Shown: positions 39,023-61,813 of the stretch, one piece after another
Numbering within the stretch: position 1 is the stretch's first letter
How the letters are laid out: the number at the start of each line of letters is the position of its first letter
Translations under genes and position numbers: made by a program
The notes under the pieces: model-generated
Told to the model about the DNA's origin: nothing
Database searches by the model: none
The model's input: the letters and a program-made list of their open reading frames with translations, nothing else
Sequence record: LR756500.1
Direction: 5' to 3' (one strand)
Length of the DNA stretch: 64,000 nucleotides

Positions 39023-39105
39023 GATTTATTCGGTTAATTATTTTAATAGCTGTCACATAATAATATGGTATAATATATATTGAGGTTGCTATTAACAAGA
39101 TTCAC
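39023..39105. repeat. 83-bp intergenic element, copy A (copy B at 61731-61813)
   Basis: Ungapped manual alignment 63/83 identical. Confidence 0.8.
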
Positions 39106-39193
39106 GGATTATTAATCTCGGATCACGGATATAATATCCTAAATAAATATTTTTATTAGCCTGACAGCAAACAAAAATTTTTTAATTGTACAA

Positions 39194-39709
39194 TTAAAAG
39201 GTTGAATATTTATCATTTAAATACTTTCTAAGATTTTTTCGCCAAGAATGATCCCATAAAAATTGTTTAGGAATTTTACAACTAAATTCTTTGGATTTAC
39301 CTTTATCTAAATGCTTAGTAGATAAAATTATATGACTTTTAGTTGTACCTATATTTATATGTTCAGGATCATATATACTCATATCATATTGTTCAATATC
39401 ATATTGAGATATTATTTTAGACATTTTTTGAGATAATACAATTAATTTTCTATGATTATCTAATATATTTAATATTTCATCTTTCTTTAGATCTTTAAAC
39501 AAAATTGTTCTAATTTTAAAGGTAACATTTTTTATGTTATCTTTCCAAACACTTAATCTATTATGTTTATCGTCTTTAAAGAAAAAATGAGTTTCTGTTT
39601 CTGCTATTACTATGAAATTTTGTGTATGAGAAGTTTTAAATGTTGTTGCTTCTCCTGCTTTAGATATTTCAGTATTTTTTTCTACTGTTATGATTTTTTG
39701 ATTATCCAT
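39194..39709 (-). CDS. Hypothetical protein
   Basis: 171 aa ORF. Confidence 0.55.
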   Translation of the reverse strand: MDNQKIITVEKNTEISKAGEATTFKTSHTQNFIVIAETETHFFFKDDKHNRLSVWKDNIKNVTFKIRTILFKDLKKDEILNILDNHRKLIVLSQKMSKIISQYDIEQYDMSIYDPEHINIGTTKSHIILSTKHLDKGKSKEFSCKIPKQFLWDHSWRKNLRKYLNDKYSTF

Positions 39710-39714
39710 GTATT

Positions 39715-40005
39715 TTAAACACCTAAAAATGTTAATGCTTTATAAGGACTCATTCCATTTTCCCAGCATTCATGAAAATGAGTTAAATTTGAATTAATTT
39801 CTTCGTCTGTATATAAAAATTCAATGTCTACATCAGATTTGAAATCTCTTCGTTCAAAAATGGCTTTCATATATTCATTAAATGATGTTACATTAATTGT
39901 AAAATCAGTAATTTTAAATCCATGTTCTAACATGATATCACATAATTGATTATATGTTTTATCTTTATTATCCGTTTTTATAATTATTCTTAATTTATTT
40001 GTCAT
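39715..40005 (-). CDS. Hypothetical protein
   Basis: 96 aa ORF ending CWENGMSPYKALTFL. Confidence 0.55.
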   Translation of the reverse strand: MTNKLRIIIKTDNKDKTYNQLCDIMLEHGFKITDFTINVTSFNEYMKAIFERRDFKSDVDIEFLYTDEEINSNLTHFHECWENGMSPYKALTFLGV

Positions 40006-40254
40006 TTAATTTAATTTAAAAAAGATTGGGATTATTTAAATCCCAATGCTTTCATACGTCTTATAAGTTCTTCTGAAATTTTTTGTATTATATTATCCTT
40101 TGTTTTTTGTCTTTTTTGTACGAGAGAATCTATTTGTACTTGAGAATTTATTTCTAGATCTTTATATATTGTTACTGGATCTTTAAAAACTCCTTCAATT
40201 GATGTATATGGTTCATATTGTGGTAATCTATGTGAACCATAAGTACCAAAATTA

Positions 40255-40276
40255 GAAGGGGCCCGAAAGCCCCTTC
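40255..40276 (-). terminator. GC-rich terminator hairpin after the AAA ATPase
   Basis: gaaggggc/gccccttc 8-bp stem, followed by taatttt on the minus strand. Confidence 0.65.
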
Positions 40277-40294
40277 CAATAGATTCTCTCTTAA

Positions 40295-41773
40295 TTACAA
40301 ATTTTTGACCTTATGTAAAATTTCTTCAACTTTTTCTGGTCCAAATAATGTTATAAAGGTTTCTCCAGTTATTTCAGCTTTAGATTTCTCTTTTTTGCCT
40401 TCAGTTAAAGCAATATGTTGCTTAAATGATTCTGCTGCTACTTCAATATCCTCAGGGGTAAGTTTTGAACTTTTTCCTCCTTCACGATACATAGCATACA
40501 TTTTAGCTTTGTTAATTACTTCTGTTGCAAAAGCTGGAACAATACCTGATAATGATTTTGCAGCTATTGAATAATCTTTATCTTGATAGATGATTGATTT
40601 ACCTTCAGCATTTCTTGCGAATTTTTTAATAAATTCTAAAGCTGTATCTTCATCAAGTGCACCCATTAAAATTAAACTGTCGATACGACCGGCACGTAAA
40701 AATGCTTTATTGATATTCTCAAGATGATTTGTTGTAAGAATAGTAATGATTGGTTTATCTTTAGTATCCATTCCATCAAGTGTATTAAGAATGTCATTGA
40801 TAGCTGCTGTTCTTGTTCCTTCTGTTGCTTTATCGATATCTTCGGCAAATATTACAGCAGGAGCGTACATTTCAGCAAGTCTTAATGCATTTTTTAATTG
40901 AGAGCATTGTTCTAAATAAATAAAAGTCCAATTATTTTCAACTGCAATTTTTGATGTTCCTCTTGCTAAGAAAGTTTTTCCGGTACCATAAGGTCCTGCA
41001 AGAAGACAACCATGTTTTAATGGAATTTTATTTTTGATACATTCGTCAGTTCTTTGAATTCTCAATAATACAGATGAAAAATCTTTTCTTGCTGTTTTAG
41101 TTAAAAGAATATCTTCCCATTTAACTTTAGATACATCAATAAAATTTGGATTTGGTGGAAAAACATTTGTATTCTCCATAAAACTTAAATCAACTTTAAA
41201 AGCTTTTCCTTTATAGATACTTTCTTCAGCTAAAATTCTTTGAGTTTCGTCAGCAATTTTTTGAGTAACTTCTTCGAATTTTCTTTTAATTTTTCCGGAA
41301 ATTTTAAATTCCATTGTTGCATTATTGTATTTAGTTTCAAGATATGAATCGCTATCCATACCAGGAAATTGCATACGTCCCCAAGGAACTTTAATATGTG
41401 AACCATCAGGAAGTTTAATGTCAATCATTTCAGGTGGTTCAGCTCCTGAAGGACCATTAACTGAAGTTAAATCGGCAAATCCAAATAAGTTAGTAATTGC
41501 TTTGTACATAGCATACGCTCCATCAAATGGATATGCTTTCATAGAAGCATTAAAATTAACTTGCTGTTCTTCTGATTCTTCTTTTCTTTTCAACCATTTA
41601 CGAGCATCGTCATATCCCATGCCTTCTGGAAGAATAATTTTAGTACCAGAGCGAACAATGTCAACGGATTTAAACTCTACTTTTTTGCTTCCGCCTTTTC
41701 CTAAAATTTCATCATAAAGTTCTTGATGAACTCCAAAAGGTTTTTCTTTTGTTTTTTCGAGTGTGTCATTCAT
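40295..41773 (-). CDS. AAA+ ATPase (classical AAA clade, no protease domain)
   Basis: Walker A GPYGTGKT, Walker B IFAEDID, SRH TTNHLENINKAFLRAGRID. Confidence 0.9.
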   Translation of the reverse strand: MNDTLEKTKEKPFGVHQELYDEILGKGGSKKVEFKSVDIVRSGTKIILPEGMGYDDARKWLKRKEESEEQQVNFNASMKAYPFDGAYAMYKAITNLFGFADLTSVNGPSGAEPPEMIDIKLPDGSHIKVPWGRMQFPGMDSDSYLETKYNNATMEFKISGKIKRKFEEVTQKIADETQRILAEESIYKGKAFKVDLSFMENTNVFPPNPNFIDVSKVKWEDILLTKTARKDFSSVLLRIQRTDECIKNKIPLKHGCLLAGPYGTGKTFLARGTSKIAVENNWTFIYLEQCSQLKNALRLAEMYAPAVIFAEDIDKATEGTRTAAINDILNTLDGMDTKDKPIITILTTNHLENINKAFLRAGRIDSLILMGALDEDTALEFIKKFARNAEGKSIIYQDKDYSIAAKSLSGIVPAFATEVINKAKMYAMYREGGKSSKLTPEDIEVAAESFKQHIALTEGKKEKSKAEITGETFITLFGPEKVEEILHKVKNL

Positions 41774-41784
41774 AAAAATAAAAA

Positions 41785-42063
41785 TTAAGTGTTTAATAAA
41801 ATACTACATTGTGTTATAATTTGTTTTAATTCTTGTTCTGTTCCTTCTAAACATGCTATTTTAATTGTATTATTAATAGAATTAAGTATTTCGCATTTAT
41901 CGCTTTGTTTTATTCCAAAATAATATGTACAATAATTACCTTTGTCTTTATCTATCCAAGATTTAGCTTGTGAATATGTACCAATAACATTTTTGCAATG
42001 TATTAATACATCATTTTGTATTTTTCGTAATTCAATAGGATATCCAGCAAATGTTAAATTCAT
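41785..42063 (-). CDS. Hypothetical protein
   Basis: 92 aa ORF packed between ligA-C and the ATPase. Confidence 0.55.
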   Translation of the reverse strand: MNLTFAGYPIELRKIQNDVLIHCKNVIGTYSQAKSWIDKDKGNYCTYYFGIKQSDKCEILNSINNTIKIACLEGTEQELKQIITQCSILLNT

Positions 42064-42064
42064 A

Positions 42065-43255
42065 TTAAAATAAACTTACTTGGTTATACTTAGTATTTGA
42101 TTTTTCTTGCTGCTTAGTATTAGATTGTTTTGTATTTGATTCATTATTAGAACCTCCCATTAATTTAATTAATGATGGATCTTTAATAACATTTTTTAGA
42201 AAATCTTCATATGTCATTACCTGAATTTTACTTCCTTTCTTTTTAAGAGATTCAGCTTTAACCATTTTCGTTGAACCAGAATCCATAGATGCAGTTAATA
42301 AATATGCACTATTTTCATCTAATTTATCTTGTACATATCCATAACTTTTTAAGTAATCAAACCAATCGTTTTTATGCTTTAAATGTCCAATAACGGGAGG
42401 TGTTCCAGTCATTTCAATTGCAATAAGTGATCCATCTACTTCTTGCGGATATTCTACAGTAATGAAATTATCCTTTAATAAAGATAAAAATCTCATTACA
42501 CGTTGATATTGATTTGAATTTTTATCAGTTAATTGTGAAATAGCTTCTTTATTTAAATGATTAAAATCATATTCTATACCTGCAATATAATTAGCTAATT
42601 GTTCCGAAACAGAAGAACCGGTATCCTTAAACTTTAGTGATTCAATCACTTGTTTAAGGGATACCGTATCGACTGAATTGACACCATCGATTATTACTTC
42701 TAATGCTCTTCCGTTTACGAATTTTCCACTTCTTACTAATGATATTTTATTAAATTTCTTTTTATCGAAATAATCTTCAACTGTTTTAATTCCAGCTGCA
42801 TATAAATCTTTAACAGCTGACATTCCAACATCTTTAAAACCGAATATTTTAACAGCAGCTTCTATTTTCTTCAACACTTGTGCAGGACATTCAGGATTAA
42901 TACACCATAAATGTTTATCATCTTCTGTCAATAATTCTCCGCATGATGGACAATTTGTGGGTAGGTTTGTTTTTAAAGTCGATTTAATTACAACTTTATA
43001 AATTTGAGGAATAATATCTCCAGCTTTAGCTACTAACACTTGAGCTCCAGGCCATGCTCCCATTTTATCTATTCTGTCTTTATTAAATAAAGTTGCTCTC
43101 TGAACAGTTGTACCATCTAATTCAATAGGTTTCATTATTGCTGTAGGTACAACTTCACCAGTAGTTCCAGTATTCCATTCTATATCTATAATTGTTGTTA
43201 TAGCATCTTTTGGGGGAAACTTTATTGCAATTGCCCAGAGTGCTGTTTTTTTCAT
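42065..43255 (-). CDS. ligA: NAD-dependent DNA ligase, C-terminal part (motif V, OB fold, Zn finger, HhH, BRCT-like)
   Basis: WAIAIKFP, TGEVVPTAIMKPIELDGTTVQRATL, GDIIPQI, CPSC...CINPEC, BRCT-like EMTG... Confidence 0.9.
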   Translation of the reverse strand: MKKTALWAIAIKFPPKDAITTIIDIEWNTGTTGEVVPTAIMKPIELDGTTVQRATLFNKDRIDKMGAWPGAQVLVAKAGDIIPQIYKVVIKSTLKTNLPTNCPSCGELLTEDDKHLWCINPECPAQVLKKIEAAVKIFGFKDVGMSAVKDLYAAGIKTVEDYFDKKKFNKISLVRSGKFVNGRALEVIIDGVNSVDTVSLKQVIESLKFKDTGSSVSEQLANYIAGIEYDFNHLNKEAISQLTDKNSNQYQRVMRFLSLLKDNFITVEYPQEVDGSLIAIEMTGTPPVIGHLKHKNDWFDYLKSYGYVQDKLDENSAYLLTASMDSGSTKMVKAESLKKKGSKIQVMTYEDFLKNVIKDPSLIKLMGGSNNESNTKQSNTKQQEKSNTKYNQVSLF

Positions 43256-43256
43256 A

Positions 43257-44270
43257 TTAAAATATTAAAAATTCAAAATTTAAACCTTGTTTAATACATG
43301 CATCTCTTTTTAAATAAATAACATCAGCATGTAATTTAATACTCCAATTAGATTTAACTTCTACTATTTTATTTTCAGATTTAATATAAATATCTGGAAA
43401 ATAGCGATGTTTAGAACCATCTAATTTATAATAATAAATTCTTCCTATTTCATTTTCTATATCTATTGCTTTTATACATATATCAGATTCTATATAACCA
43501 TCTTTAAATAATTTATCTAAAGCTTTATTTTCATAACCTTGAATTTTAATAATACTTCCAGATGGTAAAGTATATGATTTATATTGTAGTGTTTTATTCA
43601 TTACTTTCATATATTGATCACTATTTTGCATTGGATGGTCTGTTCCATATTTTTCTTTCCATTTTTTAAGTATTTTAATTCTTACTTCTGGAATCCACAT
43701 ACCATTATTTACACCATATCTATTTAATAAAGTATTTTTAATTTTATTTTGTACTTCTGGTATTTGACTTGCATTTTCAACTCCATATAGTTTTAAATAT
43801 GTATTTTTAATTTTGTCTCTAATTTCCTTTGATTTCCATTGATGATCTACATTATATAATTTTAAACATGTTTTACGTGATGATTCTAAAATTTTATTTT
43901 GTACAACTTTACTTTTTCTAGGATTATCAACTCCAAATTTTTTAATACAAGTATTTCTAACTGTTTCTCTAAATTCATATGAACTACTTGAACATTTTCT
44001 TGAACAAAATTTTCTATAATTTCTATTTTTTAAACAAAAACTATTAACTGGTTTTTTACATTCTTTACATATAGGAATATCATAAATATTATTGATTATA
44101 TGCCATACTCTATGATAAATACTTATTCTTTTAAATTTATCATTTAAAAAATTAGTTTCATTTAAAATAGAATTATACATATTTTTATATTTATTTTGTT
44201 TAGTTACTTTATCTAAAATATTAGAATTAAACAATTCCATTATAATTATTAAATCTTCTTGTGTTATCAT
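43257..44270 (-). CDS. Putative homing endonuclease inserted in ligA
   Basis: CKEC...CSRKC, KYGV repeats, YFPDIYIKSENKIVEVKS; paralogue of 3999-5204. Confidence 0.75.
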   Translation of the reverse strand: MITQEDLIIIMELFNSNILDKVTKQNKYKNMYNSILNETNFLNDKFKRISIYHRVWHIINNIYDIPICKECKKPVNSFCLKNRNYRKFCSRKCSSSSYEFRETVRNTCIKKFGVDNPRKSKVVQNKILESSRKTCLKLYNVDHQWKSKEIRDKIKNTYLKLYGVENASQIPEVQNKIKNTLLNRYGVNNGMWIPEVRIKILKKWKEKYGTDHPMQNSDQYMKVMNKTLQYKSYTLPSGSIIKIQGYENKALDKLFKDGYIESDICIKAIDIENEIGRIYYYKLDGSKHRYFPDIYIKSENKIVEVKSNWSIKLHADVIYLKRDACIKQGLNFEFLIF

Positions 44271-44296
44271 GATATATTTTTATTTTATATATCATG
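44268..44296 (-). promoter_or_regulatory. Perfect 10-bp hairpin covering the endonuclease start codon
   Basis: catgatatat (44268-44277) pairs with atatatcatg (44287-44296); the ATG is at 44270-44268. Confidence 0.7.
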
Positions 44297-44328
44297 AAAA
44301 TTTTATAGTAATTACCCATACCAATAAT

Positions 44329-45177
44329 TTATCTAAATCCTATAGTATTTCTATACTTTTCATCTCCTTTTATTACCATTCCATCTAATTGAAATGGTGA
44401 ATATTTTTCTCTATATTCTTCAAATTCATCATAAATTTTCTTAAATTCTTTAATATCGTTAAAATATTTGACATAAATAGGATATTCTTTATTAAAACCT
44501 AAATTTGTTAAAATATCTATAGTTTTATTTTTTAGTGGAAATTCAAAACTATTACCTTTATGAATTCTTAATTCGTAAGCAACAAAAACTAAATCTTTTA
44601 TAATATCTTTATTAATTTCATCTCTAGATAATATTCCAGCTACAAAATTTCTAGCATTTTTAAATTTTTTAGCATATTTTTTATCAAATATTTTTATAGG
44701 TATAACTACTTCTCCTCTAACTTCAATTTTTTCTTGAATTGAAATTTTGTTAGGAACTATAAAAAGCATTTTACTTTTTTGATCAAATCCATTTTCACCG
44801 TCTCCTCTTGTTAAAGCATTTTCTAAAATTCCGTATTCATATACAAGATTCATAGAATTTCCATCAAATTTAGGAGTTACTTCAAATTCATAAACTCCTT
44901 TTGATTTAATATTTAATGACCAGTTATCAAATTCAGATATTACTTTTTGCATGTCATTACTATCATAAACACTTAATTTACCTAAAGTTCCCATTGGAGA
45001 TGGATGAAGAAATTTTCCAGCTTTAACTGATCCAACAATAAAAGGAACAGTTGAACCGGCTTCTTTTAATTTTTCTTCTAAAATATCAAACTCTGCATCA
45101 GTCATTATAGGATTACCTGCATAGTAAGTATCTTTAGCTTTTAAATATAATGTTTCTTTATCTTTTAAATTAAGCAT
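44329..45177 (-). CDS. ligA: NAD-dependent DNA ligase, N-terminal adenylation part
   Basis: YYAGNPIMTDAEFD, motif I PKFDG, ALTRGDG, EVRGEV, RNFVAG, motif IV LDGMVIK; stops at IGFR. Confidence 0.9.
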   Translation of the reverse strand: MLNLKDKETLYLKAKDTYYAGNPIMTDAEFDILEEKLKEAGSTVPFIVGSVKAGKFLHPSPMGTLGKLSVYDSNDMQKVISEFDNWSLNIKSKGVYEFEVTPKFDGNSMNLVYEYGILENALTRGDGENGFDQKSKMLFIVPNKISIQEKIEVRGEVVIPIKIFDKKYAKKFKNARNFVAGILSRDEINKDIIKDLVFVAYELRIHKGNSFEFPLKNKTIDILTNLGFNKEYPIYVKYFNDIKEFKKIYDEFEEYREKYSPFQLDGMVIKGDEKYRNTIGFR

Positions 45178-45185
45178 ATTCTAAA

Positions 45186-45680
45186 TTATTGTTTAAACAT
45201 TTTTATAATACTATCTGTAGGCATATTATAGATTAAATTTATTAAATAATCTTTTCTTGATTTTAAATCTTCAAAAATAAAATCTCCAAAATAAATTTGT
45301 ATAAGTGTTATATCTTCGTTACGATTTAAATCAATTAAAGAATTATTTTTAAATATTTCCATTTTAGAAGAGTTCAAATAATCTTTTAAATAAAAATTTG
45401 ATTTATATGCATTTGAGTATAATGATTCTTTAATAATCAATACAACATCATTTCCTGAATACAAAAAAGTATTATATTTTTTAATTGTATAAACAGCTTC
45501 AAATGGAATTTTTATTGTTGATGCATCTTTACTTTTAATATTTAAAGTATCACTTATAATACCAAACATATAAATATTTTCTATTCTATTATTTACTGTT
45601 GTTTCATGCGAATATTCATATATAAGTACTCCAACTATTATAAGAACTAATAAAATACATAAATATAAAAGATATTTCAT
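45186..45680 (-). CDS. Hypothetical membrane-anchored protein
   Basis: N-terminal hydrophobic helix LLYLCILLVLIIVGVLIY. Confidence 0.55.
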   Translation of the reverse strand: MKYLLYLCILLVLIIVGVLIYEYSHETTVNNRIENIYMFGIISDTLNIKSKDASTIKIPFEAVYTIKKYNTFLYSGNDVVLIIKESLYSNAYKSNFYLKDYLNSSKMEIFKNNSLIDLNRNEDITLIQIYFGDFIFEDLKSRKDYLINLIYNMPTDSIIKMFKQ

Positions 45681-45697
45681 TTAATTAAAATTTATAT

Positions 45698-45715
45698 GTA
45701 AATATAATAATAAAG
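45698..45715 (-). promoter_or_regulatory. Candidate early promoter CTTTATTATTATATTTAC (identical at 59388-59405, 17/18 at 52963-52980)
   Basis: Repeated 18-mer 17-26 nt upstream of minus-strand ATGs; TATATTTA resembles the Bacteroidota -7 element TAnnTTTG. Confidence 0.55.
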
Positions 45716-45750
45716 GACCTAAAATAAAACTATATAAACATTTATTTATG

Positions 45751-46188
45751 TTAGACATTATTTTCTATTAATTCATCTAATTTTTTACAATAATTATCAT
45801 ACCAAATCTTAACATCTTCTCTATGTTTGTTTACTAATTCATTATAAGCCTCTCTGCAATCATATTCACTCTTAAATAATTTAAGATCATATTCTGTTCT
45901 ATGATTAAATGTTAATTGTTTACTAACTATTTTCCCTCTTTTACCAATTGCATTTAAATTTGAATTTTGACGTAATGCATGAAAATTATTAATAGATTTA
46001 AATCTAGCAAGATTAGTTTGCCAACTATCATTTTTAATTTTTATAATAACTTCAGTCGGTTTTATATGTGTATCTGCTGAAGATTTTTGTTGTCGTTTTG
46101 AATATTCGCAAATCCAACAAATAAATTGACCATCAATATCGTTATTAAAAAAATCTTTAATTTCGTCAAAAGTAATTAATCCATTCAT
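45751..46188 (-). CDS. Hypothetical protein
   Basis: 145 aa ORF. Confidence 0.55.
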   Translation of the reverse strand: MNGLITFDEIKDFFNNDIDGQFICWICEYSKRQQKSSADTHIKPTEVIIKIKNDSWQTNLARFKSINNFHALRQNSNLNAIGKRGKIVSKQLTFNHRTEYDLKLFKSEYDCREAYNELVNKHREDVKIWYDNYCKKLDELIENNV

Positions 46189-46192
46189 ATTT

Positions 46193-46759
46193 TTAAATTT
46201 TATTTTTTAATCTTTTTTCTTCTCCTTTTAAAACATTTACAACTGATTCAAAATCATTAGTTCTTCTAATCTGAGTCTCTAATTTATTTTTAGCTAAGAT
46301 AGTATCAACAGATAATGAGTCTGCAAGTCTTAAATAAGAATCTAACTGTTTAAATATTATAGATGGATTTTTTATAACTATGTTAGTTATATTAAAATCA
46401 TATGTTTGTTTAAGTTCTTCAGATGATGATTTAATAAAATTATCAATAAAAGTTTTAAATGTTTCATCTGAAATTAAATCATTATATTTTAAGAATGATC
46501 CATAATAAATTAATCTATCAGAAAAAACTTTTTTAACTTTAATTATAGATAATGAATCTGAATCATAAGTAATATTTATGGAAATATTTTTAAATAATAA
46601 TGAATCTCTAGTTACAAATCCTAAACTATCAATTAATAATGTTTTAGATTTATTTAATTCAATGTTTTTACTAGTATTATCATTCTTAAAAAAATATAAG
46701 TAAATAAGAAAAACCTGTAGAATTATAACAATAACTAATAATATTTTTATAGTTTTCAT
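46193..46759 (-). CDS. Hypothetical membrane-anchored protein
   Basis: N-terminal TM ILLVIVIILQVFLIYLYFF. Confidence 0.55.
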   Translation of the reverse strand: MKTIKILLVIVIILQVFLIYLYFFKNDNTSKNIELNKSKTLLIDSLGFVTRDSLLFKNISINITYDSDSLSIIKVKKVFSDRLIYYGSFLKYNDLISDETFKTFIDNFIKSSSEELKQTYDFNITNIVIKNPSIIFKQLDSYLRLADSLSVDTILAKNKLETQIRRTNDFESVVNVLKGEEKRLKNKI

Positions 46760-52937: not shown

Positions 52938-53325
52938 TTTTACTATATTTAATTAATTAAAGGTAAATATAATAAAAAAGTTTTAATTATTATAATTTTT
53001 CGAAACATTTTAAAATAATAGAACATTTTTCATATTCTTCTATTTCAATATAATAGTTCTTTAGTTCTTCCAAAATTATATTCCAATTATTTCTATGACA
53101 TTTTATTTGCATAAGTTTAGATCCTTTTAATTCTAAATAAAAAATAGGCATTAATAAAATATCATTATTTATTCCATAGATAATAGCGTTATATCTAACT
53201 ATAATTTATTATAATTTATAAAATTTAATAATTAAAAATAATAATAAAGTTTTAAAAATATTACTAAATTTTATATAAAAATATAAAGGCTTGATGATAT
53301 ATAAAATAAATTAATATTTTAAAGA

Positions 53326-53490
53326 ATGGAAGATTTTAAGTTATTAAAACTGTCGAAGGTGTGTAAAGAATTTAATGTAACTAGACAAACATTATATAAT
53401 TGGAAGGAGAAAGGCGTATTGAATTTTATAAAAATTGGCGGTTTGAATTTTATAAAAGATAAAGATATTAAAGCATTAATAAATAAGTAA
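53326..53490 (+). CDS. Stand-alone MerR/excisionase-type HTH (IS607 TnpA N-terminal-like) mini-gene
   Basis: Manual translation MEDFKLLKLSKVCKEFNVTRQTLYNWKEKGVLNFIKIGGLNFIKDKDIKALINK; the stop abuts the tnpB start. Confidence 0.75.
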   Translation: MEDFKLLKLSKVCKEFNVTRQTLYNWKEKGVLNFIKIGGLNFIKDKDIKALINK

Positions 53491-54813
53491 TTGAAGACAA
53501 TTAAATTACCATATAAAACTGATGAAGATTTAACATCTATATTTAAACAGTACTCTAGTGTTGTAAGATATAGTTATAATAGATTCATAGATGGTATGAA
53601 TGAGAAAGAGATTAGGTTAATGATTAAAGAGTTGAGTAATATTGATTTACTTAATTCATGGTTGATTCAGTGTGCGATATTGGATGGTAAAGCGATGCAG
53701 AAGCGGTTTGAAGATAAAAAGGTTGTATTTGGCGGAAAGTTTAATTTTATAAATAGATTAAAAGGTAAAATCTCTAAAAATGAGTTTGATTTGAAACGAT
53801 TAAGCCCCTTAAATATTCAGGGTGAAGTATTAAAGAAGGGAAATAGGAGTTTTGAGTTAGATATAATAGAGAATAATAAAATAGTATTTAAGTTAAATAA
53901 AGCTAAGCATATAGAACTCTATCTTCCTAAATTAAGGAGTAATATAAAAAAGGAGTTGTATAGGATTCAGCAGTTGAATGAAGTAAAATATAATGAACAA
54001 GGTTATACGTTTTCTGTTAGATTTGATATGAAATATGTTTATATAAGTTTTGAAGAGTTTAAGAATGAAGAAGTTAAGCAGTTGAATGAGAATAGGTATT
54101 TAGGTATAGATTTGAATCCAGATACAATAGGAATATCCGTTTTAGAAAATAATCAAGTAATTTATGCTCAAGAGTTTAGTTTAAAATTAATTTTTGATAG
54201 AATTTTAAATAAAAATTTAAGTTCGGATTCTGTTAAGATGAAGTATTATCAGAATAAGTTAGGTTTTGAAACGATCGAGATTGCTAAATCTGTATCGTTG
54301 ATTGCTAGACGGTTTGGTTGTAAGACGGTTTATGTTGAGGATTTGAAGTTTAATCAAAAGTTGAGTAAGGAGCAAAAACATAATCATTTAGGAAATAGGA
54401 AGTGTAGAAATTTATGGAAGAGAGATAAATTTATTTCTAATTTGACTAAGCGATTGAATGTATTGGGTATTGGTTTATATGAAGTTAATCCAGCATATTC
54501 TAGTTTTATAGGAAATTTAATGTATGAATATACTGATGCGGTAAATGCATCAATAGAGATTGCTAGACGAGGGTTTGAGTATAGAATAAAGAAAAGCAAG
54601 ATAGGGTTTTATCCAGTTTTTGATGTGAAACACCGATGGAAGGAAATGGTTGCATCGTTTAAAGATTGGAAGGAATTTTATATTGAGGTGGTAAAAAATT
54701 CGAGATTGAAATATCGAGTTTCATTGGATGAGTGTAAGTATTTGTTTGATGTTTTTAAGCAAAATTCGCATAAAAGTATGGTATTAAATTATGTCTTTAG
54801 GGACAAAATATAA
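53491..54813 (+). mobile_element. tnpB: TnpB copy 4 (IS607-like, no zinc finger)
   Basis: VVRYSYNR, LGIDLNPD, VYVEDL, VNPAYSS, DAVNASIEIARRG. Confidence 0.85.
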
Positions 54814-54982
54814 AATATTTATGTCTTTATAGACAAATGTAATTTTATAGAAGCTTTTTATAATTAATTATTTGATTTATTGAATTTTGTATTTTATATA
54901 ACAAATCTTTATTAGCAGTTAATTGGTCAAAGGCTTCATTAACTGTATTGCAGTTCATAAGTTTAAAAGTAGATAATTGCAT

Positions 54983-55825
54983 TTATTTTTTTATTTTTTG
55001 TAGCTTTTCAAATAAAATTCTTTCTTCTTTAGATATAGATTCTGGAATTATTATTTGTACATTTATTATTAAGTCTCCTGTTTGTAAAGGATTTTCCATT
55101 AATGGCATTCCTTTACCATGAATTCTAAATTTTTTATTATTTGGAGTACAAGATGGTATTTTAATTTTTAATTTATTTTCGAATGTTTCTATTTCAACAT
55201 GGCCCCCTAGTATTGCAGTATATAAATCTACCTCTAAATTATAATAAAGATCTAAATTATTAACATTAAAATTTTTATCACTTATAACATGAACTATTAC
55301 AATTAAATCTCCATTATTAGGTGTTCCTTTTCCACCATATCCTTTAAATCTCAATTTGGTATTATCTCTAACACCTTTCTTAATATTAACGGAGTGTTGT
55401 TCACCTCCTGCATATACATTTTTATATATACCATTAAAAGCTTCTTTAAGTGTTAAATATACATCTACATGATAATCTTGTCCCTGCCCATTCCAAGCAC
55501 TAGCAAAAATACTATCAAAAATATCAGATGCATTAATATTATCCCATGACTCACGATTATAGAAATCTTTCATGAAATCATCATAAACATAATATCTATT
55601 AGCACCTTCAAGATCATATTTATTTCTTTTATCTGCATCACTTAATATAGAATATGCTGAAGTAATTTCTTTAAATTTATCTTCAGCTTCTTTATCTTTA
55701 TTTTTATCGGGATGCCATTTAAGAGCTAATTTTCTGTAAGCTTTTTTTATTTCATCTTGGGTTGCATTTTTATCTATCTCTAATATGTCATATAAACTTT
55801 TATCCACCCTTCCTTTATTTTTCAT
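54983..55825 (-). CDS. dnaJ: DnaJ/CbpA-type co-chaperone (J domain plus C-terminal domain, no Zn finger)
   Basis: LYDILEI...[17 protein letters not shown]; GDLIVIVHV; GKGMP. Confidence 0.92.
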
Positions 55826-56093
55826 CGAAATAACATAAAAAATTGTTTCTTACATATACATACTGTATAAAACCTTCTAAATCACTAGCTATAATAAATA
55901 TAGATTCTTCTATTTCTCCGTTTGATTTTTCTTCGGCAACATTCATAAACCATTTATCAGAATTTTCCCACCACAAATGAACAGTATTTCTACCTTTATC
56001 TTTTTTGAGATATCCTTTTTTAGATTTATTGCCTATATTATTTATGAATTCTCGTTGAGTTCCATTAAACTTTTTCAGATTCGTTAATTTCAT
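55815..56093 (-). CDS. Hypothetical protein
   Basis: 92 aa ORF overlapping its neighbours. Confidence 0.5.
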
Positions 56094-56415
56094 CTTTTAT
56101 TTCAGTTAGTTCGTTAATAGGTATAACTTGATTAATAAATTTACTTATTTCTTCTATATGATTTTTAACTTCTTGAATATCAACAAAAGTATATTTACCA
56201 CTTTTAATATGACTTTGAATTTCAGATATATTCATTCCTTCTTTTTTCATTTTTCTGAATTCTAATATATCCTTTTTCTTTTGTGATGTAACATCTTTTT
56301 CTTTAAATGCAATATCTTTTTCTAATGCACTAGCTATTCTTTCTAATGCTGTTACTGCTCTAGGGAAATCTGTGTTAAAAAACTTTTCTCCCATTCGTGT
56401 TTTGTGAAATTCCAT
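56065..56415 (-). CDS. Hypothetical protein
   Basis: MEFHKTRMGEKFF...ALERIASALEK. Confidence 0.55.
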   Translation of the reverse strand: MEFHKTRMGEKFFNTDFPRAVTALERIASALEKDIAFKEKDVTSQKKKDILEFRKMKKEGMNISEIQSHIKSGKYTFVDIQEVKNHIEEISKFINQVIPINELTEIKDEINESEKV

Positions 56416-56559
56416 ATTTTAGATATTTAAAATAAATATAATAATAATGTTTTTAAAAAATTAATTTTTATATATATCACGGCGAAACTATTTCTGTTTT
56501 TCTAATATAAAATTTACAGCTTAAGAGTTGGAGTAATGTATATTTAAAGCGGATCTGTT

Positions 56560-57132
56560 ATGGCAATATTAACAAAATCGGAAATATTTAGACTAGGTTT
56601 TAAATCTGTTGGAGAGAATGTTTATATCTCAGACAAAGCTAGTTTTTACGGAACACGAAATATAGAACTAGGTAATAATGTAAGAATTGACGATTTCGTC
56701 GTTATCTCAGCTGGAGAAAAAGGAATTCAAATCGGTAATTATATTCATATAGGTGTTCAATCTTCTTTAATAGGACAAGAACATATTCTATTAAATGATT
56801 TTTCTAATATATCTTCTAAAGTAGCAATTTATAGTTCTAATGACGATTATAGTGGCCAGACTATGAGCAATCCTATGATACCGAACGAATATAAAAATGT
56901 TTATCATGCTGGAGTTTATATTGGAAAACATGTAATAATTGGATGTGGAAGTGTTATATTGCCAGGTTCATATATTGGCGATTCATCAGTTATTGGAGCA
57001 TTATCTATAGTTAAAGTAAATAGTAGTATTCCTGATTTAGAAATATGGGCAGGTATTCCAGTTAAATATATTAAGCCTAGAGATAAAAATCATTTATTAT
57101 TAGAAGAAAAATTTATGACTTCTAATATATAA
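56560..57132 (+). CDS. Hexapeptide-repeat (left-handed beta-helix) O/N-acetyltransferase
   Basis: IELGNNVRIDD, IGNYIHIG, IGKHVIIGCGSVILPG, IWAGIPVK. Confidence 0.88.
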   Translation: MAILTKSEIFRLGFKSVGENVYISDKASFYGTRNIELGNNVRIDDFVVISAGEKGIQIGNYIHIGVQSSLIGQEHILLNDFSNISSKVAIYSSNDDYSGQTMSNPMIPNEYKNVYHAGVYIGKHVIIGCGSVILPGSYIGDSSVIGALSIVKVNSSIPDLEIWAGIPVKYIKPRDKNHLLLEEKFMTSNI

Positions 57133-57145
57133 ATAAAATGTTACA

Positions 57146-57562
57146 GTGAAACATATAAAGGAATATGAAGATTTTGTTTATGAATTTAGATCAACTAGAT
57201 TAATAAGAAATACAGGATCTAAATTTATAAACAAATTTAAAAATAATGTACCAAGTATTAGAGATTTTAATGGAATATCACTTGTTAAAAATCTTATTGA
57301 TAATTATGAAACACGAAATAAAATAACTAAAGTTTTATTAAAAACAGAAGATAAAGATAAAATAAAAGATTTAAAAGACGATTTAAATGATAATAAAGAT
57401 GAACATACTAAAATATCTGATAAAATTAAAACTAATACTGAAAAATTATCTTCATCTAATAAAAAAGTATCCGATAAGGATAAAGATAAAATTACAGAAA
57501 TGAAAAAGAAAATTCAAAAAATACAAGATGAATTTAAAAACATAAAATCTAAAAATAAATAA
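57146..57562 (+). CDS. Hypothetical protein with CTS-like tag
   Basis: Starts (GTG) MKHIKEYEDFVYE; TATAAATA at 57128-57135. Confidence 0.65.
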   Translation: MKHIKEYEDFVYEFRSTRLIRNTGSKFINKFKNNVPSIRDFNGISLVKNLIDNYETRNKITKVLLKTEDKDKIKDLKDDLNDNKDEHTKISDKIKTNTEKLSSSNKKVSDKDKDKITEMKKKIQKIQDEFKNIKSKNK

Positions 57563-57565
57563 TAT

Positions 57566-58057
57566 ATGAAATACTTAACAGAGTTTTTTGATTTCATTAA
57601 TAACGATATTAATGAAAATGATATGTTATCTGAATATTTAAAGGAAGAATATTTAAATGAAGATTTTAGTTCTGAGTTTTATAATTTAGAAAATATAAAT
57701 GAATCTAAAAAATTATATGATACTGCTTTATGGAAAGAATATAGAAAAATAAAACCTTTACTAAAAGAAGGAAAACAATATAAAAAAGATACTAAAAGAT
57801 ATTTTGAATTACAAAAGGAATATATGTCAAAAGTATTAGAAGAAGATAAAGTTAATATTAAATATATGTCTGATCTTTTAATTGAAAAACTTAATTTATT
57901 AAATGAAGGAAGTAGAGATTATACTCTAAATGAAATGAGAAATAATAAAATTAAATTAATAGATAATTATAAGAAAAAACTTAATAGACAAATTAATAAA
58001 GACTTAAAAGAAATGGAAGCGTTTTTTGATAGTAATCCTAAAATTTTATTGGTTTAA
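57566..58057 (+). CDS. Hypothetical protein with CTS-like tag
   Basis: Starts MKYLTEFFDFIN; further LNE motifs. Confidence 0.6.
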   Translation: MKYLTEFFDFINNDINENDMLSEYLKEEYLNEDFSSEFYNLENINESKKLYDTALWKEYRKIKPLLKEGKQYKKDTKRYFELQKEYMSKVLEEDKVNIKYMSDLLIEKLNLLNEGSRDYTLNEMRNNKIKLIDNYKKKLNRQINKDLKEMEAFFDSNPKILLV

Positions 58058-58384
58058 TTTCCATTTTATATAACTTTCACTATAATTTTTAGCAAGATCA
58101 AGAGCAAGATTTTCTATTATTTTTAATTCTTTTAATGAAAGATGTCTCATAAAGAAATCAATATTATTTTTAATTTTTATTTCTTGTGATTTTTCAAAGG
58201 TTAATATTTCTGCTTTCATTCTAATTTAGATAATTTACATTCAGCCTCATATAATAAGTCACGAAGCATTTTATTTTATTTTTCTATTTCAATTAATTCT
58301 AATTCGACAAGCCCAAATGTTCCCATACAAACTTCATCGTGAATAAGCTCCTTAATTTTTATCGTTTTTGCATTCATATTAATT

Positions 58385-58624
58385 TTATTCAGTTATTAAT
58401 CCTTGTTGAATTGCCAGTTTCTTAGCTTCATATAATGGTTTAGATCTATTTTCAGTAGCAAACATTAATCCAGACATATAATCTGGACCATTACTACTAT
58501 ATCTTGCTATTACAGTAGGTTCATTTTCACAAAAATATAAATCGTATTCTTCATACATACCTAAATATTTACAGATATCACAATCATGTTTAAATCTTGG
58601 AGTGTTCATTTTATATTTATTCAT
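58385..58624 (-). CDS. Small hypothetical protein
   Basis: PRFKHDCDICKYLG...DLYFC...ARY. Confidence 0.6.
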   Translation of the reverse strand: MNKYKMNTPRFKHDCDICKYLGMYEEYDLYFCENEPTVIARYSSNGPDYMSGLMFATENRSKPLYEAKKLAIQQGLITE

Positions 58625-59371
58625 TTATTCAATATCATTTAAGTTATATCCTGAAAATAAACTAATATATTGAAGAACTGTTGTTCCATTTGCATCGCCA
58701 GATCCAGCTTCAGTTCCTTTTGAATCAAAAAAACAAATAGCGTCATCAGGCTTAAGATGAAATGCCATTAATATTCCGGATTCCGAAATATATTTTCCAT
58801 TAATAGTTGTATTATTATATTCATCAATATATTTTTTATAAGCCTTTCTATTTTCTCTTAATAATTGTTTGAATGCACCTATTTGTAATTCTTTATTTTT
58901 TAAAAAATCTTCTTTTGATACTGTTATACCAATTAATTTTAATGTAGATGGAGAAAATTGAAAATAACCCATCATTGTACCATTAGTAATAGTCCATTTA
59001 TTACCAGATTCCATTTTACCTACATCTAATATAAATTGATCAAAAGTTTTTAATTTTACTTTTTTGATATCAATATAAACAGTATCTTTAATTTGAACTT
59101 TTTGAACACTAATAATAGGTTCAACTAATTTTGTGCTTAAAACATAAAGTAATATTACAACAGTTAAAATATAAAATACTTTAAGTAAAAATTTTTTATA
59201 ACCATATTTAACAAATCTTTTAAATTTACCACTAACAATATCTTTTAATAAAGGATATGCAGCCTGAAGTATAAAATTGAATTGTTCTATTTTATTATCT
59301 AAATATCTGTTTGTTGGATAATTGCTATCCTCGGTTTTCTTAAGAGTAGGAATTTTAGTAAATATATTCAT
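58625..59371 (-). CDS. Membrane-anchored lysozyme-like (lytic transglycosylase-type) protein
   Basis: TM helix, then MESGNKW, GYFQF, ISESGILMAFHL, DANGTTVLQYISLFSGY. Confidence 0.6.
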   Translation of the reverse strand: MNIFTKIPTLKKTEDSNYPTNRYLDNKIEQFNFILQAAYPLLKDIVSGKFKRFVKYGYKKFLLKVFYILTVVILLYVLSTKLVEPIISVQKVQIKDTVYIDIKKVKLKTFDQFILDVGKMESGNKWTITNGTMMGYFQFSPSTLKLIGITVSKEDFLKNKELQIGAFKQLLRENRKAYKKYIDEYNNTTINGKYISESGILMAFHLKPDDAICFFDSKGTEAGSGDANGTTVLQYISLFSGYNLNDIE

Positions 59372-59423
59372 TTAAAATATAATTTAAGTAAATATAATAA
59401 TAAAGTTTTTATAAAAATAATAT

Positions 59424-59609
59424 TTAAAAATGAAACATTCTAGCTAACTCTTCATGACCTATTGCTTCAAATCTAACTGCTGATACGCAATGACTATGGA
59501 CGCTTGCCATTCCGGCTATTCCAAGTTTCAAATAACCTTTACTATTCTCTTTAAGACATAGATGTTTGCCTAATTTTATTTGAAGATTTTTTACTAACTT
59601 TTTATTCAT
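59424..59609 (-). CDS. Small hypothetical protein
   Basis: 61 aa ORF overlapping the upstream gene end. Confidence 0.4.
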   Translation of the reverse strand: MNKKLVKNLQIKLGKHLCLKENSKGYLKLGIAGMASVHSHCVSAVRFEAIGHEELARMFHF

Positions 59610-60198
59610 AATTCATCTTTATAATAATTTTATTTAAATCAATTACATTAGTAGTAGCTGCCTGTTCACAAGCATTAGCAGCAAGAGTAGCACTAGAGTA
59701 AGAATTATTAACAGCAGCAAGAGTAGCAAAATGAGCAGCAGAACTATAATGTTTGATATTAAAAACAACATTACGAATAGCATAATGAGCACTTTCTATT
59801 ATTCGATCTTCGCCATTCAACCAATTATCTGCCCATTCATTCCAACGTTCATCTTTGTAAACTTCTTTAACACATAATATACCAAATGTAATTTTTTTTA
59901 TTAAAGATATTTCAGGTAACTTTAATTCTTTGATTATTGTCATTATAGTACAACCACCTTTTAAACCATGGTCATCAAGATGAGTTCCTTCTGCTTTAAC
60001 TTCAAATAGTTTAGGCATATTAAACCCAGCATGTATTGGATTTAGTAATACTGCAAGTTCAGGACTATGATAATAATGTAAATATCCTTGACTACAAAGT
60101 TGATTTGGCAAACCTGATACAGTTTTCTTTATGCCTAGTTCCCACTGAAAACCCTTATGAGTTTGAAGATTTTGGTTAGTTAATTTATACTTTTTCAT
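59602..60198 (-). CDS. Hypothetical phage protein
   Basis: LCSQGYLHYYHSPELAVLLNPIHA motif. Confidence 0.6.
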   Translation of the reverse strand: MKKYKLTNQNLQTHKGFQWELGIKKTVSGLPNQLCSQGYLHYYHSPELAVLLNPIHAGFNMPKLFEVKAEGTHLDDHGLKGGCTIMTIIKELKLPEISLIKKITFGILCVKEVYKDERWNEWADNWLNGEDRIIESAHYAIRNVVFNIKHYSSAAHFATLAAVNNSYSSATLAANACEQAATTNVIDLNKIIIKMNYE

Positions 60199-60202
60199 TA
60201 TT

Positions 60203-60676
60203 TTATAATTCGTTTTTATATTTAGGAACCTTTATAATATCATTATACCATTTTAAATTATCTAAATCTTCATTTTTAAAATTATTTAGCATAATTTCAT
60301 ATTCCAGTCCCGATTCATAATAATTTTGCATAAACCATAAAACACGATCTTCATATGATAATTCTTCTCTTATAAATATAGGATCTTCATGCCTTAATGT
60401 GGTAATTAATGGAATTTGATTCTTTAACTTTTTAAATTCTTCTGATAAATATTTACCAAATTCTCTAATCATATTAATCTTTGTAAGAATATGTAAAATA
60501 GAATTAATATTAAAATCTTTTGTTAAAATATTCCAAGCAGTTCCTTTTGTTATACATTTATTTACTTTACTTATTTCTTTCCAATCAGTAATATTATTTT
60601 GTGCGTTAATTAACATTTCTAATAATTCTTTATTAGTTATTTTTTCTGCAATTTTTTTAGCTAAAATTTTGTTCAT
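60203..60676 (-). CDS. Hypothetical protein
   Basis: 157 aa ORF. Confidence 0.55.
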   Translation of the reverse strand: MNKILAKKIAEKITNKELLEMLINAQNNITDWKEISKVNKCITKGTAWNILTKDFNINSILHILTKINMIREFGKYLSEEFKKLKNQIPLITTLRHEDPIFIREELSYEDRVLWFMQNYYESGLEYEIMLNNFKNEDLDNLKWYNDIIKVPKYKNEL

Positions 60677-60681
60677 AATAA

Positions 60682-61122
60682 TTATACTAAAGGTGATGAT
60701 ACTAATTTGGGAGAATAATCATTTATAAATTCAGATTTAGAAAAATATATTCCAAATAAATCGATAAGTTTATATTGATATTCAATTCCTTTCAATAAAT
60801 TTTCACTATACATAACCTTTGTAAAAGCAGTAGGCATGGGTAAATCTGTTTCAGATAAAGGTTTTCCTTTTAATAAACAATAGCATCTTGTTAATAATTC
60901 CAATAAAATAAAATCTTTATCTAAACTCCAATAATCGCAATATAAACATATCTTCTGTTTCCAAACAGAAGATAAAATTATTTTAAAATCTTCAAATTCA
61001 ATACAATGTTTATTTATCATACCTATATGTTGTTCAATATACATTTTAGGTATAGATATTATTTCATTATTTTTCTTTTTTATAAGTGCTTGTAAATTTT
61101 TTAAAAAATCATTTTCATTCAT
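60682..61122 (-). CDS. Hypothetical protein
   Basis: 146 aa ORF. Confidence 0.5.
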   Translation of the reverse strand: MNENDFLKNLQALIKKKNNEIISIPKMYIEQHIGMINKHCIEFEDFKIILSSVWKQKICLYCDYWSLDKDFILLELLTRCYCLLKGKPLSETDLPMPTAFTKVMYSENLLKGIEYQYKLIDLFGIYFSKSEFINDYSPKLVSSPLV

Positions 61123-61342
61123 AAATATAAGGAATGTAATTAAGTAATTTTGTAACTATTCTATTTTTGTATTCTATAGCTTTATTTTTAGATATCACTC
61201 TTTCCGCTTCTGTTAAATCCCAATCTGAATCTATTTTAGATATGATAGCATTCATTTTATTTTTTAGAGTTTTTAATCGTTTTTCTGATAATTTATTTAA
61301 TAAGTTATCAGATAATTCCGTATAGTTTAAATTTGTTTTCAT
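61115..61342 (-). CDS. Small hypothetical protein
   Basis: 75 aa ORF with overlaps on both sides. Confidence 0.5.
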   Translation of the reverse strand: MKTNLNYTELSDNLLNKLSEKRLKTLKNKMNAIISKIDSDWDLTEAERVISKNKAIEYKNRIVTKLLNYIPYIYE

Positions 61343-61722
61343 ATAAATTTGTACATATAGTTAATACCTTCCCAATAGTGTTCATATCCTTCTTTAACAT
61401 AAATATCAATAAGTGTTTGTTGTCCTATTTCAGAATATGGATCAGGATTTAAAATTATCGTATCTGCCCCCTTTTCTTTCATTATATTTTGAGCTTTATT
61501 TATCAAAAGTTTAAAAATTCCTTTTCTTCTAAATTCAGGATTAACATATAAATTACAAATTATCCATGTATATTTTGTAAGATCATTAAATCCTAAATCT
61601 AAATTAGATATTATAGTAGAATCAATAAGTCCAATTCTATTATTTAAATAGTTAGCTTTTAAAAAAATTCCTGTATTTGTGTTATATACATATTCTATTT
61701 TAACATCTAAAACATTAAACAT
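61339..61722 (-). CDS. GNAT-family N-acetyltransferase
   Basis: ICNLYVNPEFRRKGIFKLLI acetyl-CoA motif; LIDIYVKEGY. Confidence 0.85.
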   Translation of the reverse strand: MFNVLDVKIEYVYNTNTGIFLKANYLNNRIGLIDSTIISNLDLGFNDLTKYTWIICNLYVNPEFRRKGIFKLLINKAQNIMKEKGADTIILNPDPYSEIGQQTLIDIYVKEGYEHYWEGINYMYKFI

Positions 61723-61730
61723 ATTTAAAA

Positions 61731-61813
61731 GATTTATACGGTTATTTATTTTAATAGCTAAATTTTAATAATATGGTACAATATAAAAATTAACCGCTAA
61801 TACCAAGATTCAC
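61731..61813. repeat. 83-bp intergenic element, copy B
   Basis: 63/83 ungapped identity to 39023-39105. Confidence 0.8.

What the first reader, a model, noticed from the sequence alone, without database searches (positions are those of the whole stretch)
39023..61813. Ungapped 83-bp intergenic element repeated 22.7 kb apart: shared regulatory site or sRNA family
Seen: 39023-39105 and 61731-61813 align without gaps (63/83). Conserved blocks GATTTATWCGGTTAWTTATTTTAATAGCT, TAATAATATGGTAYAATATA and GCTAWTAMCAAGATTCAC are separated by fixed-length variable spacers. Both copies sit 1-8 nt upstream of a minus-strand ATG. The middle block is an extended -10 (TGGTAYAAT) pointing along the plus strand, antisense to the operon. 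Copy A is also enclosed by gctgtca/tgacagc (39049-39055, 39162-39168) with internal hairpins. Inference: either a multi-site operator/promoter for an unknown regulator, or promoters for a family of antisense small RNAs.
Basis: partly seen in the sequence, partly recalled or inferred. Interest (0 to 1): 0.65.

Follow-up and report, generated by a model that had tools for sequence, protein, structure and literature searches.

The report
Shared promoter-leader module in huge phage
An 83-bp intergenic module, present three times in one uncultivated ~460-kb phage and always just upstream of an unrelated accessory gene, is most likely a small promoter-plus-leader class of that phage: real and under selection, but an ordinary kind of phage regulatory repeat.

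Summary
Window 39023-39105 and 61731-61813 align without gaps at 63/83. The genome-wide background for such windows is 26±4, and the best chance match is 48. Fifteen of the 20 mismatches fall in two spacers, and the flanks are not homologous, so this is not a decaying segmental duplication.

The window is part of an uncultivated huge phage (LR756500, 462 kb, about 25% GC). Its genes lack Shine-Dalgarno sites, and it encodes four sigma-70-family factors.

A third, more diverged copy lies outside the window, in the same 83-nt register, upstream of a GT29-like glycosyltransferase. There are exactly three copies, all oriented with the downstream gene. Copies A and C sit directly behind terminator hairpins.

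Read on the gene (minus) strand, all three copies keep this frame: TTGnTn, 17 nt, TAnTnT, ACCATATTA, 10 nt, GCTATTA, 7 nt, TWACCRWATRAAT. The start codon lies inside this last block (copy C) or 1 to 8 nt after it (copies A and B). No RNA structure is supported on either strand.

Best reading: a minor promoter class plus a conserved unstructured leader or operator, driving three accessory transcription units. The antisense-sRNA family idea has no positive support. No relatives exist in any database searched, and no RNA data could be obtained.

The parts
39023..39105 (-). Copy A of the 83-bp module, read on the gene strand
   Evidence: Ungapped 63/83 to copy B and 49/83 to copy C, the best hits in the genome.
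61731..61813 (-). Copy B of the 83-bp module
   Evidence: Same calls. It scores 53/83 to copy C in the same register.
39093..39098 (-). -35-like hexamer TTGTTA in copy A. The matching site in B is TTGGTA at 61801-61806.
   Evidence: TTG is invariant in all three copies. The promoter scan lists TTGTTA-17-TATTAT.
39070..39075 (-). -10-like hexamer TATTAT in copy A. B has TATTGT at 61778-61783 and C has TAATTT.
   Evidence: TAnTnT is kept in three of three copies, 17 nt from the TTGnTn hexamer.
39061..39069 (-). Invariant ACCATATTA in copy A (B: 61769-61777). The predicted start region is about 39062-39063 in A and 61770-61771 in B.
   Evidence: Identical in A, B and C. The start position is inferred from the hexamer spacing and has not been observed.
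39044..39050 (-). Invariant GCTATTA in the predicted leader of copy A (B: 61752-61758)
   Evidence: Kept in all three copies, exactly 10 nt after ACCATATTA.
39024..39036 (-). Distal leader block TWACCRWATRAAT in copy A (B: 61732-61744). It lies in the ribosome landing zone.
   Evidence: Kept in three copies at fixed spacing. In copy C it contains the start codon.
38827..39021 (-). Gene downstream of copy A: a 64-aa protein with no known relatives (P0001)
   Evidence: No Pfam or PHROG family and no homologues. The AlphaFold model is helical but of low confidence.
61339..61722 (-). Gene downstream of copy B: a 127-aa GNAT acetyltransferase (P0002), the first of a run of small genes
   Evidence: PF00583 at E=1.2e-8. 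No close homologues.
39168..39199 (-). Terminator-like hairpin plus U-tract that ends the upstream gene, directly 5' of copy A
   Evidence: -8.4 kcal/mol, z -2.05, followed by AAUUUUUGUUUG. Copy C has an analogous but non-homologous hairpin with z -4.0.
39066..39074 (+).
   Evidence: Present in all three copies because it overlaps the gene-strand -10. This is the rival reading.

Best explanation
The element is a minor, phage-specific promoter-plus-leader module read on the gene (minus) strand.

Upstream half. Conserved blocks carry a -35-like TTGnTn and, 17 nt on, a -10-like TAnTnT followed by the invariant ACCATATTA. RNA polymerase would start there, probably host core enzyme carrying one of the phage's own sigma-70-family factors.

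Downstream half. GCTATTA and TWACCRWATRAAT at fixed spacing would be transcribed as a short, A/U-rich, unstructured 5' leader. This leader reaches to, or overlaps, the start codon. It most likely serves as a common operator or translation-initiation region.

Outcome. Three otherwise unrelated accessory units would be switched together: a 64-aa gene without relatives, a GNAT acetyltransferase gene cluster, and a GT29-like glycosyltransferase.

What is shown: the conservation pattern, rigid spacing, position, orientation and lack of RNA structure. What is inferred: promoter activity, strand, the sigma factor used and the role of the leader.
For: 1. Selection, not decay. Identity is about 93% in the blocks against 1/16 in the spacers, a clustering that 0 of 20,000 permutations reach. 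The flanks show no blastn or tblastx similarity.
2. Three copies in one ungapped 83-nt frame. The window's own 462-kb genome has exactly three matches, all on the gene strand, and the reversed-pattern control has 0.
3. Orientation. Every copy points into a gene whose ATG lies inside the module's last block or within 8 nt after it.
4. Need for a promoter. Copies A and C sit immediately behind terminator-like hairpins (z -2.05 and -4.0). The downstream genes therefore need their own promoter, and those intergenic regions contain neither of the phage's two abundant promoter motifs.
5. Spacing. TTG at a canonical 17 nt from TAnTnT is kept in all three copies.
6. Sigma factors. The phage encodes two RpoD/RpoS-like and two ECF-like sigma factors. 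No RNA polymerase beta subunit (PF00562) was detected; PF00940 also gave no hit, but its control search found nothing anywhere. Several promoter classes are therefore expected.
7. Leaders. The predicted leaders are no more structured than shuffled sequence, or less so (z +0.7 and +2.1). This fits a genome whose start sites lack Shine-Dalgarno sequences and are A-rich at -13 to -10.
Against: - No transcript data.
- The hexamers match the consensus only moderately (8-9 of 12). Matches of that quality are no more frequent in these regions than in shuffles of this AT-rich DNA.
- The plus-strand extended -10 (TGGTAnAnT) is conserved in the same three copies, so sequence alone cannot fix the strand.
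- The host may use Bacteroidota-type promoters, which these hexamers do not match.
- A plain promoter does not explain why about 40 nt downstream of the start are conserved. The leader or operator role is a guess.
- No relatives exist to test conservation across phages.
Confidence: 0.55

Rival explanations
1. Plus-strand promoters (extended -10 TGGTAnAnT) make short non-coding RNAs antisense to the 3' end of the upstream gene.
For: TG plus a TAnAnT hexamer is kept in all three copies. An extended -10 needs no -35. Block 3 (CAAGAT...) would lie at about +14 to +23 of such an RNA.
Against: - Only about 18 nt of the would-be RNA are conserved.
- The downstream segments share no sequence or structure (z -1.45 and +1.85).
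- There is no Rfam hit.
- The nearby hairpins have their U-tracts on the other strand.
- The three antisense targets are unrelated: a 171-aa protein, a 69-aa protein and HSP20.
- The largest conserved block would lie 30-60 nt upstream of the start, with no role.
- This reading does not explain why every copy abuts a gene start.
Confidence: 0.12
2. The module is mainly a multi-site DNA operator for an unidentified phage or host regulator. The protein would contact four blocks at fixed spacing, including the direct repeat ACC(R)(W)AT 35 bp apart. The actual promoter would lie elsewhere or be incidental.
For: Rigid spacing over 83 bp in three copies, with conserved blocks well outside the hexamers. 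The paired ACC-motifs 35 bp apart occur only at these three sites in the genome.
Against: There is no dyad symmetry. The TAATAGC/GCTATTA inverted repeat is perfect only in copy A. The single ACC motif is not enriched genome-wide (10 observed against 8 expected). No candidate regulator was found next to the sites, and P0001 has no detectable DNA-binding fold. This reading largely overlaps the main explanation rather than replacing it.
Confidence: 0.18
3. A neutral remnant of duplication or recombination, as in the promoter-terminator cassettes that shuffle genes in T4-type phages, with no present function.
For: The copies precede non-core accessory genes. Copies A and C show a terminator-then-promoter layout, as in PeSLs.
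Against: The divergence is extremely uneven: blocks about 93% identical, spacers 1/16. Neutral decay does not produce this. The flanks are not homologous. The only indel between the two near-identical genomes is not at a copy.
Confidence: 0.05
4. A structured cis-regulatory RNA in the 5' leader, such as a riboswitch or thermosensor.
For: A 29-nt near-identical stretch lies directly before the start codon in A and B.
Against: The leaders fold no better than shuffles (z +0.72 and +2.07). The substitutions break the only plausible helix without compensation. There is no Rfam match.
Confidence: 0.03

Closest known systems
Phage promoter classes read by phage-encoded sigma factors on host RNA polymerase (for example the SPO1 and SPbeta-type sigma cascades; own knowledge)
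   Same: A small set of near-identical -35/-10-type sites with fixed spacing sits in front of functionally unrelated phage genes. The genome carries its own sigma-70-family genes.
   Different: No transcription data are available. No sigma factor has been assigned. There are only three sites. An unusually long conserved stretch lies downstream of the start.
PeSL composite promoter-terminator cassettes of T4-type phages (PMC2839356, PMC4122927)
   Same: An intergenic regulatory repeat in front of accessory genes. Copies A and C have a stem-loop terminator immediately followed by the promoter-like module.
   Different: The stem-loops are not part of the repeat and are not homologous to each other, and copy B has none. 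There are three copies rather than dozens. There is no sign that the copies bound indels. The spacers are fully diverged, so the copies offer little homology for recombination.
Translational operators of phage RNA-binding repressors (T4 RegA type; own knowledge)
   Same: A conserved, unstructured A/U-rich stretch lies within the ribosome-binding window of several unrelated mRNAs.
   Different: The position relative to the AUG shifts by up to 15 nt among the copies. No RegA homologue was detected, although that search had no positive control. RNA binding is untested.
The two abundant promoter-like motifs of this same phage: class 1 (cTTTgTTATTATATTTAc) and class 2 (GATATATAA)
   Same: Intergenic and gene-oriented, lying 20-50 nt from start codons.
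   Different: The 83-bp module scores below the genome's 99.9th percentile for the class 1 matrix. For class 2, only copy C's -10 region exceeds the 99.9th percentile (score 5.1 against 3.6). It is far longer and far rarer.

Membership tests
Sigma-70-family-dependent promoter | -35-like and -10-like hexamers 16-18 nt apart | tested here: met
   TTGTTA/TTGGTA/TTGATG, then 17 nt, then TATTAT/TATTGT/TAATTT in copies A, B and C.
Sigma-70-family-dependent promoter | Hexamer matches rise above what the base composition gives | tested here: inconclusive
   The consensus scan finds no more sites than shuffles in either region. The support comes from three-copy conservation, not from hexamer quality.
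Sigma-70-family-dependent promoter | Lies upstream of a gene and is oriented with it | tested here: met
   Three of three copies.
Sigma-70-family-dependent promoter | Transcripts start a few nt downstream of the -10 | not testable with these tools
PeSL promoter-terminator cassette | Stem-loop terminator and early promoter conserved together as one repeat unit | tested here: not met
   The hairpins before A and C are unrelated in sequence, and B has none.
PeSL promoter-terminator cassette | Many copies, which bound indels between close relatives | tested here: not met
   There are three copies. The only indel between the window and the 99.9%-identical sister genome is at 53195-54890, not at a copy.
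cis-antisense or small RNA family | Transcribed region conserved in sequence or structure | tested here: not met
   Only 18 nt are conserved beyond the putative start. Fold z-scores are -1.45 and +1.85. No Rfam family matches.
cis-antisense or small RNA family | A promoter on the opposite strand | tested here: inconclusive
   TGGTAnAnT is present in three copies, but it overlaps the gene-strand -10.
Riboswitch or structured leader | Conserved secondary structure with compensatory changes | tested here: not met
   Leader z-scores are +0.72 and +2.07. The changes in copy B break the TAATAGC/GCTATTA helix.
RegA-type translational operator | A cognate RNA-binding repressor encoded by the phage | tested here: inconclusive
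   PF01818 was not found in the sister genome, but the control search also found nothing anywhere.

The most novel reading that the evidence does not exclude
The 83-bp module is the complete recognition unit of a three-promoter mini-regulon. One of the phage's four own sigma factors, together with a repressor or RNA-binding protein acting on the conserved leader, would co-ordinately switch on accessory genes for acetylation and glycosylation (GNAT, GT29-like transferase, a 64-aa protein without relatives). That would be a dedicated host-surface or anti-defence programme in an uncultivated huge phage.
Probability: 0.2. Interest if true: 0.45.

Novelty: new member of a known kind. Interest (0 to 1): 0.25.

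Why it matters
Almost nothing is known about how uncultivated huge phages time their gene expression. This genome offers a readable promoter vocabulary: two abundant motif classes, two rare repeat classes and four phage sigma factors. The 83-bp module is a clean three-member class with an unusually long conserved leader. If it is assigned to a sigma factor, it would mark out a co-regulated set of accessory genes and give a handle for reporter or pull-down work. It does not challenge any current concept.

Tried and rejected
More copies or relatives:
- Exact or degenerate block patterns in viral contigs gave none, or one chance hit in a giant-virus contig.
- A 22-base spaced pattern in metagenome contigs found only the phage itself and two chance hits inside coding DNA.
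- blastn against phage records found only the window's own genome.
- Flanking proteins P0002 and P0003 have no related loci.
- P0001 and P0002 have no homologues in the word-indexed protein search.
- The other contigs carrying P0001 are identical to the window.
- The distant 595-kb relative LR756511 has no site above its control.

Other negative or weak results:
- Profile searches of the sister genome gave weak extra hits. One, at G001 about 243.6 kb, keeps the distal blocks but lacks the -35 block and has no gene behind it; I regard it as a possible relic only. The hits at 254.2 kb, 269.4 kb and 6.5 kb were rejected on inspection.
- Segmental duplication was rejected.
- The module is not a variant of the phage's class 1 or class 2 motifs.
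- RNA structure is not supported on either strand.
- P0001 as a DNA-binding autoregulator has no support from Pfam, PHROGs, the Atlas search or a low-confidence AlphaFold model.
- Host assignment from DnaJ relatives was ambiguous: Bacteroidetes MAG contigs are best, followed by Patescibacteria and Gammaproteobacteria.

Full report
**What the window is.** The 64-kb window is 100% identical to part of LR756500.1, an unannotated 462-kb 'uncultured phage' record. It is 99.9% identical to a 429-kb IMG/VR record, G001. GC content is about 25%, and genes are densely packed, mostly on the minus strand. Start codons have no Shine-Dalgarno signal; instead they show A-enrichment at -13 to -10. The sister genome encodes two RpoD/RpoS-like and two ECF-like sigma factors. 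No RNA polymerase beta subunit (PF00562) was detected; PF00940 (single-subunit polymerase) also gave no hit, but its control search found nothing anywhere. Huge phages that carry their own sigma-70 are on record (PMC7162821). The host is unknown. The missing SD signal and the 'Sig70_bacteroi1' best hits of the ECF-like factors fit Bacteroidota, but DnaJ relatives are ambiguous.

**The observation.** The two 83-mers share 63 positions without a gap. Every other 83-mer in the genome scores 26±4 against them, and the best chance match scores 45-48. The 20 mismatches are not spread evenly. Fifteen lie in one 6-nt and one 10-nt spacer, which share only 1 of 16 positions, and 0 of 20,000 permutations reach that clustering. 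Three kb on either side show no nucleotide or translated similarity. The neighbouring proteins are unrelated: a 64-aa protein without relatives against a GNAT acetyltransferase downstream, and a 171-aa protein against a 69-aa protein upstream. The blocks are under constraint.

**A third copy.** Scanning the sister genome found a more diverged copy outside the window, at G001 about 402,056-402,138 on the minus strand. It is the best non-self hit for both A (49/83) and B (53/83), in the same ungapped register. In the window's own 462-kb genome, the spaced pattern ATCTTG-N26-ACCATATTA-N10-GCTATTA, with up to three mismatches allowed, hits exactly these three places. All three are on the same strand, and the reversed-pattern control gives zero. 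Copy C precedes a 206-aa GT29-like glycosyltransferase and follows an HSP20 gene. One further weak match, at G001 about 243.6 kb, keeps only the distal blocks and has no gene behind it; I count it as a possible relic at most.

**Anatomy on the gene strand.** The three-way alignment has four invariant groups at fixed spacing:
- TG.ATCTTG.T....GC
- A.ATAT.T.ACCATATTA.T
- GCTATTA
- T.ACC..AT.AAT

The first group contains TTGnTn. Exactly 17 nt later comes TAnTnT, followed at once by the invariant ACCATATTA. The last two groups lie at about +13 to +40 from the inferred start. The start codon follows 1 nt after the module in A and 8 nt after it in B, and lies inside the last block in C. The module is therefore not locked to the start codon, but its distal block always falls within the ribosome's landing zone.

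Terminator-like hairpins with a U-tract on the gene strand lie immediately upstream of copies A and C (z -2.05 and -4.0). Copy B sits 20 nt after the stop codon of the preceding gene, with no hairpin.

**Other promoter-like motifs of the phage.** K-mer enrichment in intergenic DNA reveals two abundant, gene-oriented motifs. Class 1 (cTTTgTTATTATATTTAc) has about 49 intergenic sites. Class 2 (GATATATAA) has 23 sites, 19-36 nt from start codons in most cases. The 83-bp module does not score as class 1; for class 2, only copy C's -10 region passes the genome's 99.9th percentile, copy A lies just below it and copy B scores far lower. The genes behind the terminators in A and C therefore have no other recognisable promoter.

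**RNA structure.** None of the segments tested folds better than shuffled sequence; the best z-score is -1.45. The segments were the whole module on each strand, the gene-strand leaders and the putative plus-strand RNAs. The gene-strand leaders are, if anything, less structured than expected (z +0.72 and +2.07). The one appealing helix, TAATAGC/GCTATTA flanking the central block, is perfect in A but broken without compensation in B and C. Rfam finds nothing in the window, and there are no tRNAs.

**Interpretation.** The most economical reading is a minor promoter class read on the gene strand, fused to a conserved, unstructured leader. It would drive three accessory transcription units. With four phage sigma factors, several promoter classes are expected; which factor reads this one is unknown. 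The conserved 40 nt downstream of the start are not needed for a plain promoter. I infer a shared operator or translation-initiation region, but this is the weakest step.

Because the two -10 readings overlap almost base for base, TGGTAnAnT is conserved in the same three copies. Three things speak against it as the main function: very little of the would-be RNA is conserved, the three antisense targets have nothing in common, and the module always abuts a gene start. Without transcript data the strand remains an inference.

**Comparison with known systems.** The module works like a phage sigma-dependent promoter class. In copies A and C it resembles the terminator-promoter junctions (PeSLs) of T4-type phages (PMC2839356, PMC4122927). 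It fails the PeSL membership features: the stem-loops are not part of the repeat, there are only three copies, and no indels are bounded by them. It is not a member of any Rfam family. A RegA-like translational operator is a functional analogy only.

**Verdict.** This is a real, selected, three-copy regulatory module, specific to this phage lineage as far as current databases show. It is of an ordinary kind. The N runs at 5007-5030 and 8355-8375 were left untouched.

Noticed in passing
window 38700-38810 (-); also G001 83.5 kb (+), 269.4 kb (-), 333.2 kb (-): A second intergenic repeat family, directly downstream of the 64-aa gene. It has an invariant TCGAAACTTT, then about 13 nt, then CC.ATATAAAATTTA followed by GGGCCGGTGAAAATG-like sequence. 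There are four copies (nhmmer E from 2e-6 to 2e-3) and no consensus RNA structure. It could be another rare promoter class, with an ECF-like GAAAC -35.
   Followed up: partly
window 45681-45750, 52938-52989, 56416-56559, 59372-59423 and about 45 more sites in the genome: Abundant gene-oriented motif cTTTgTTATTATATTTAc, 25-50 nt before most of the start codons it precedes. It is probably the main promoter class of the phage. A block of plus-strand genes at G001 236-273 kb carries it together with long conserved upstream extensions.
   Followed up: partly
window 10720-10862, 29197-29293, 44271-44328, 56416-56559, 38660-38690: A second abundant motif, (G/T)GATATATAA, with 23 intergenic sites in the genome, 19-36 nt upstream of start codons in most cases. 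It looks like a distinct promoter class.
   Followed up: partly
window 34406-35683: A TnpB/OrfB_IS605-like gene on the plus strand (35043-35672; PF01385 and PF07282), preceded by 630 nt without a long ORF. A 94.6% identical second copy lies elsewhere in the genome (G001 24178-25454). It appears to be an IS200/605-type element inside the phage.
   Followed up: partly
window 53195-54890: A 1.7-kb segment carrying a 405-aa plus-strand ORF with no Pfam family. It is absent from the otherwise 99.9%-identical sister genome and has an 88% copy elsewhere in that genome (G001 229220-230862). It is likely a mobile insertion that varies within the population.
   Followed up: partly
window 14629-15831 and 20338-21542: Two genes of about 1.2 kb (401 and 392 aa) are 93% identical at the DNA level and lie 5.7 kb apart. 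Internal repeats also occur at 25345-25871 and 27376-28020.
   Followed up: no
window 54983-55825, 56560-57132, 62048-63661; G001 401442-402558: Accessory genes unusual for a phage: a full DnaJ, a hexapeptide acyltransferase, an ABC transporter ATPase with its permease, an HSP20 and a GT29 (sialyltransferase-family) protein. Together with the GNAT, they hint at a glycan-modification or export module.
   Followed up: no
G001 241729-242562, 281055-281600, 338272-339108, 408174-408935 (outside the window): Four sigma-70-family genes: two RpoD/RpoS-like and two ECF-like. The best family hit of the 181-aa ECF-like factor, and the second-best of the 253-aa one, is a Bacteroidetes-type ECF model.
   Followed up: partly
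   Followed up: no
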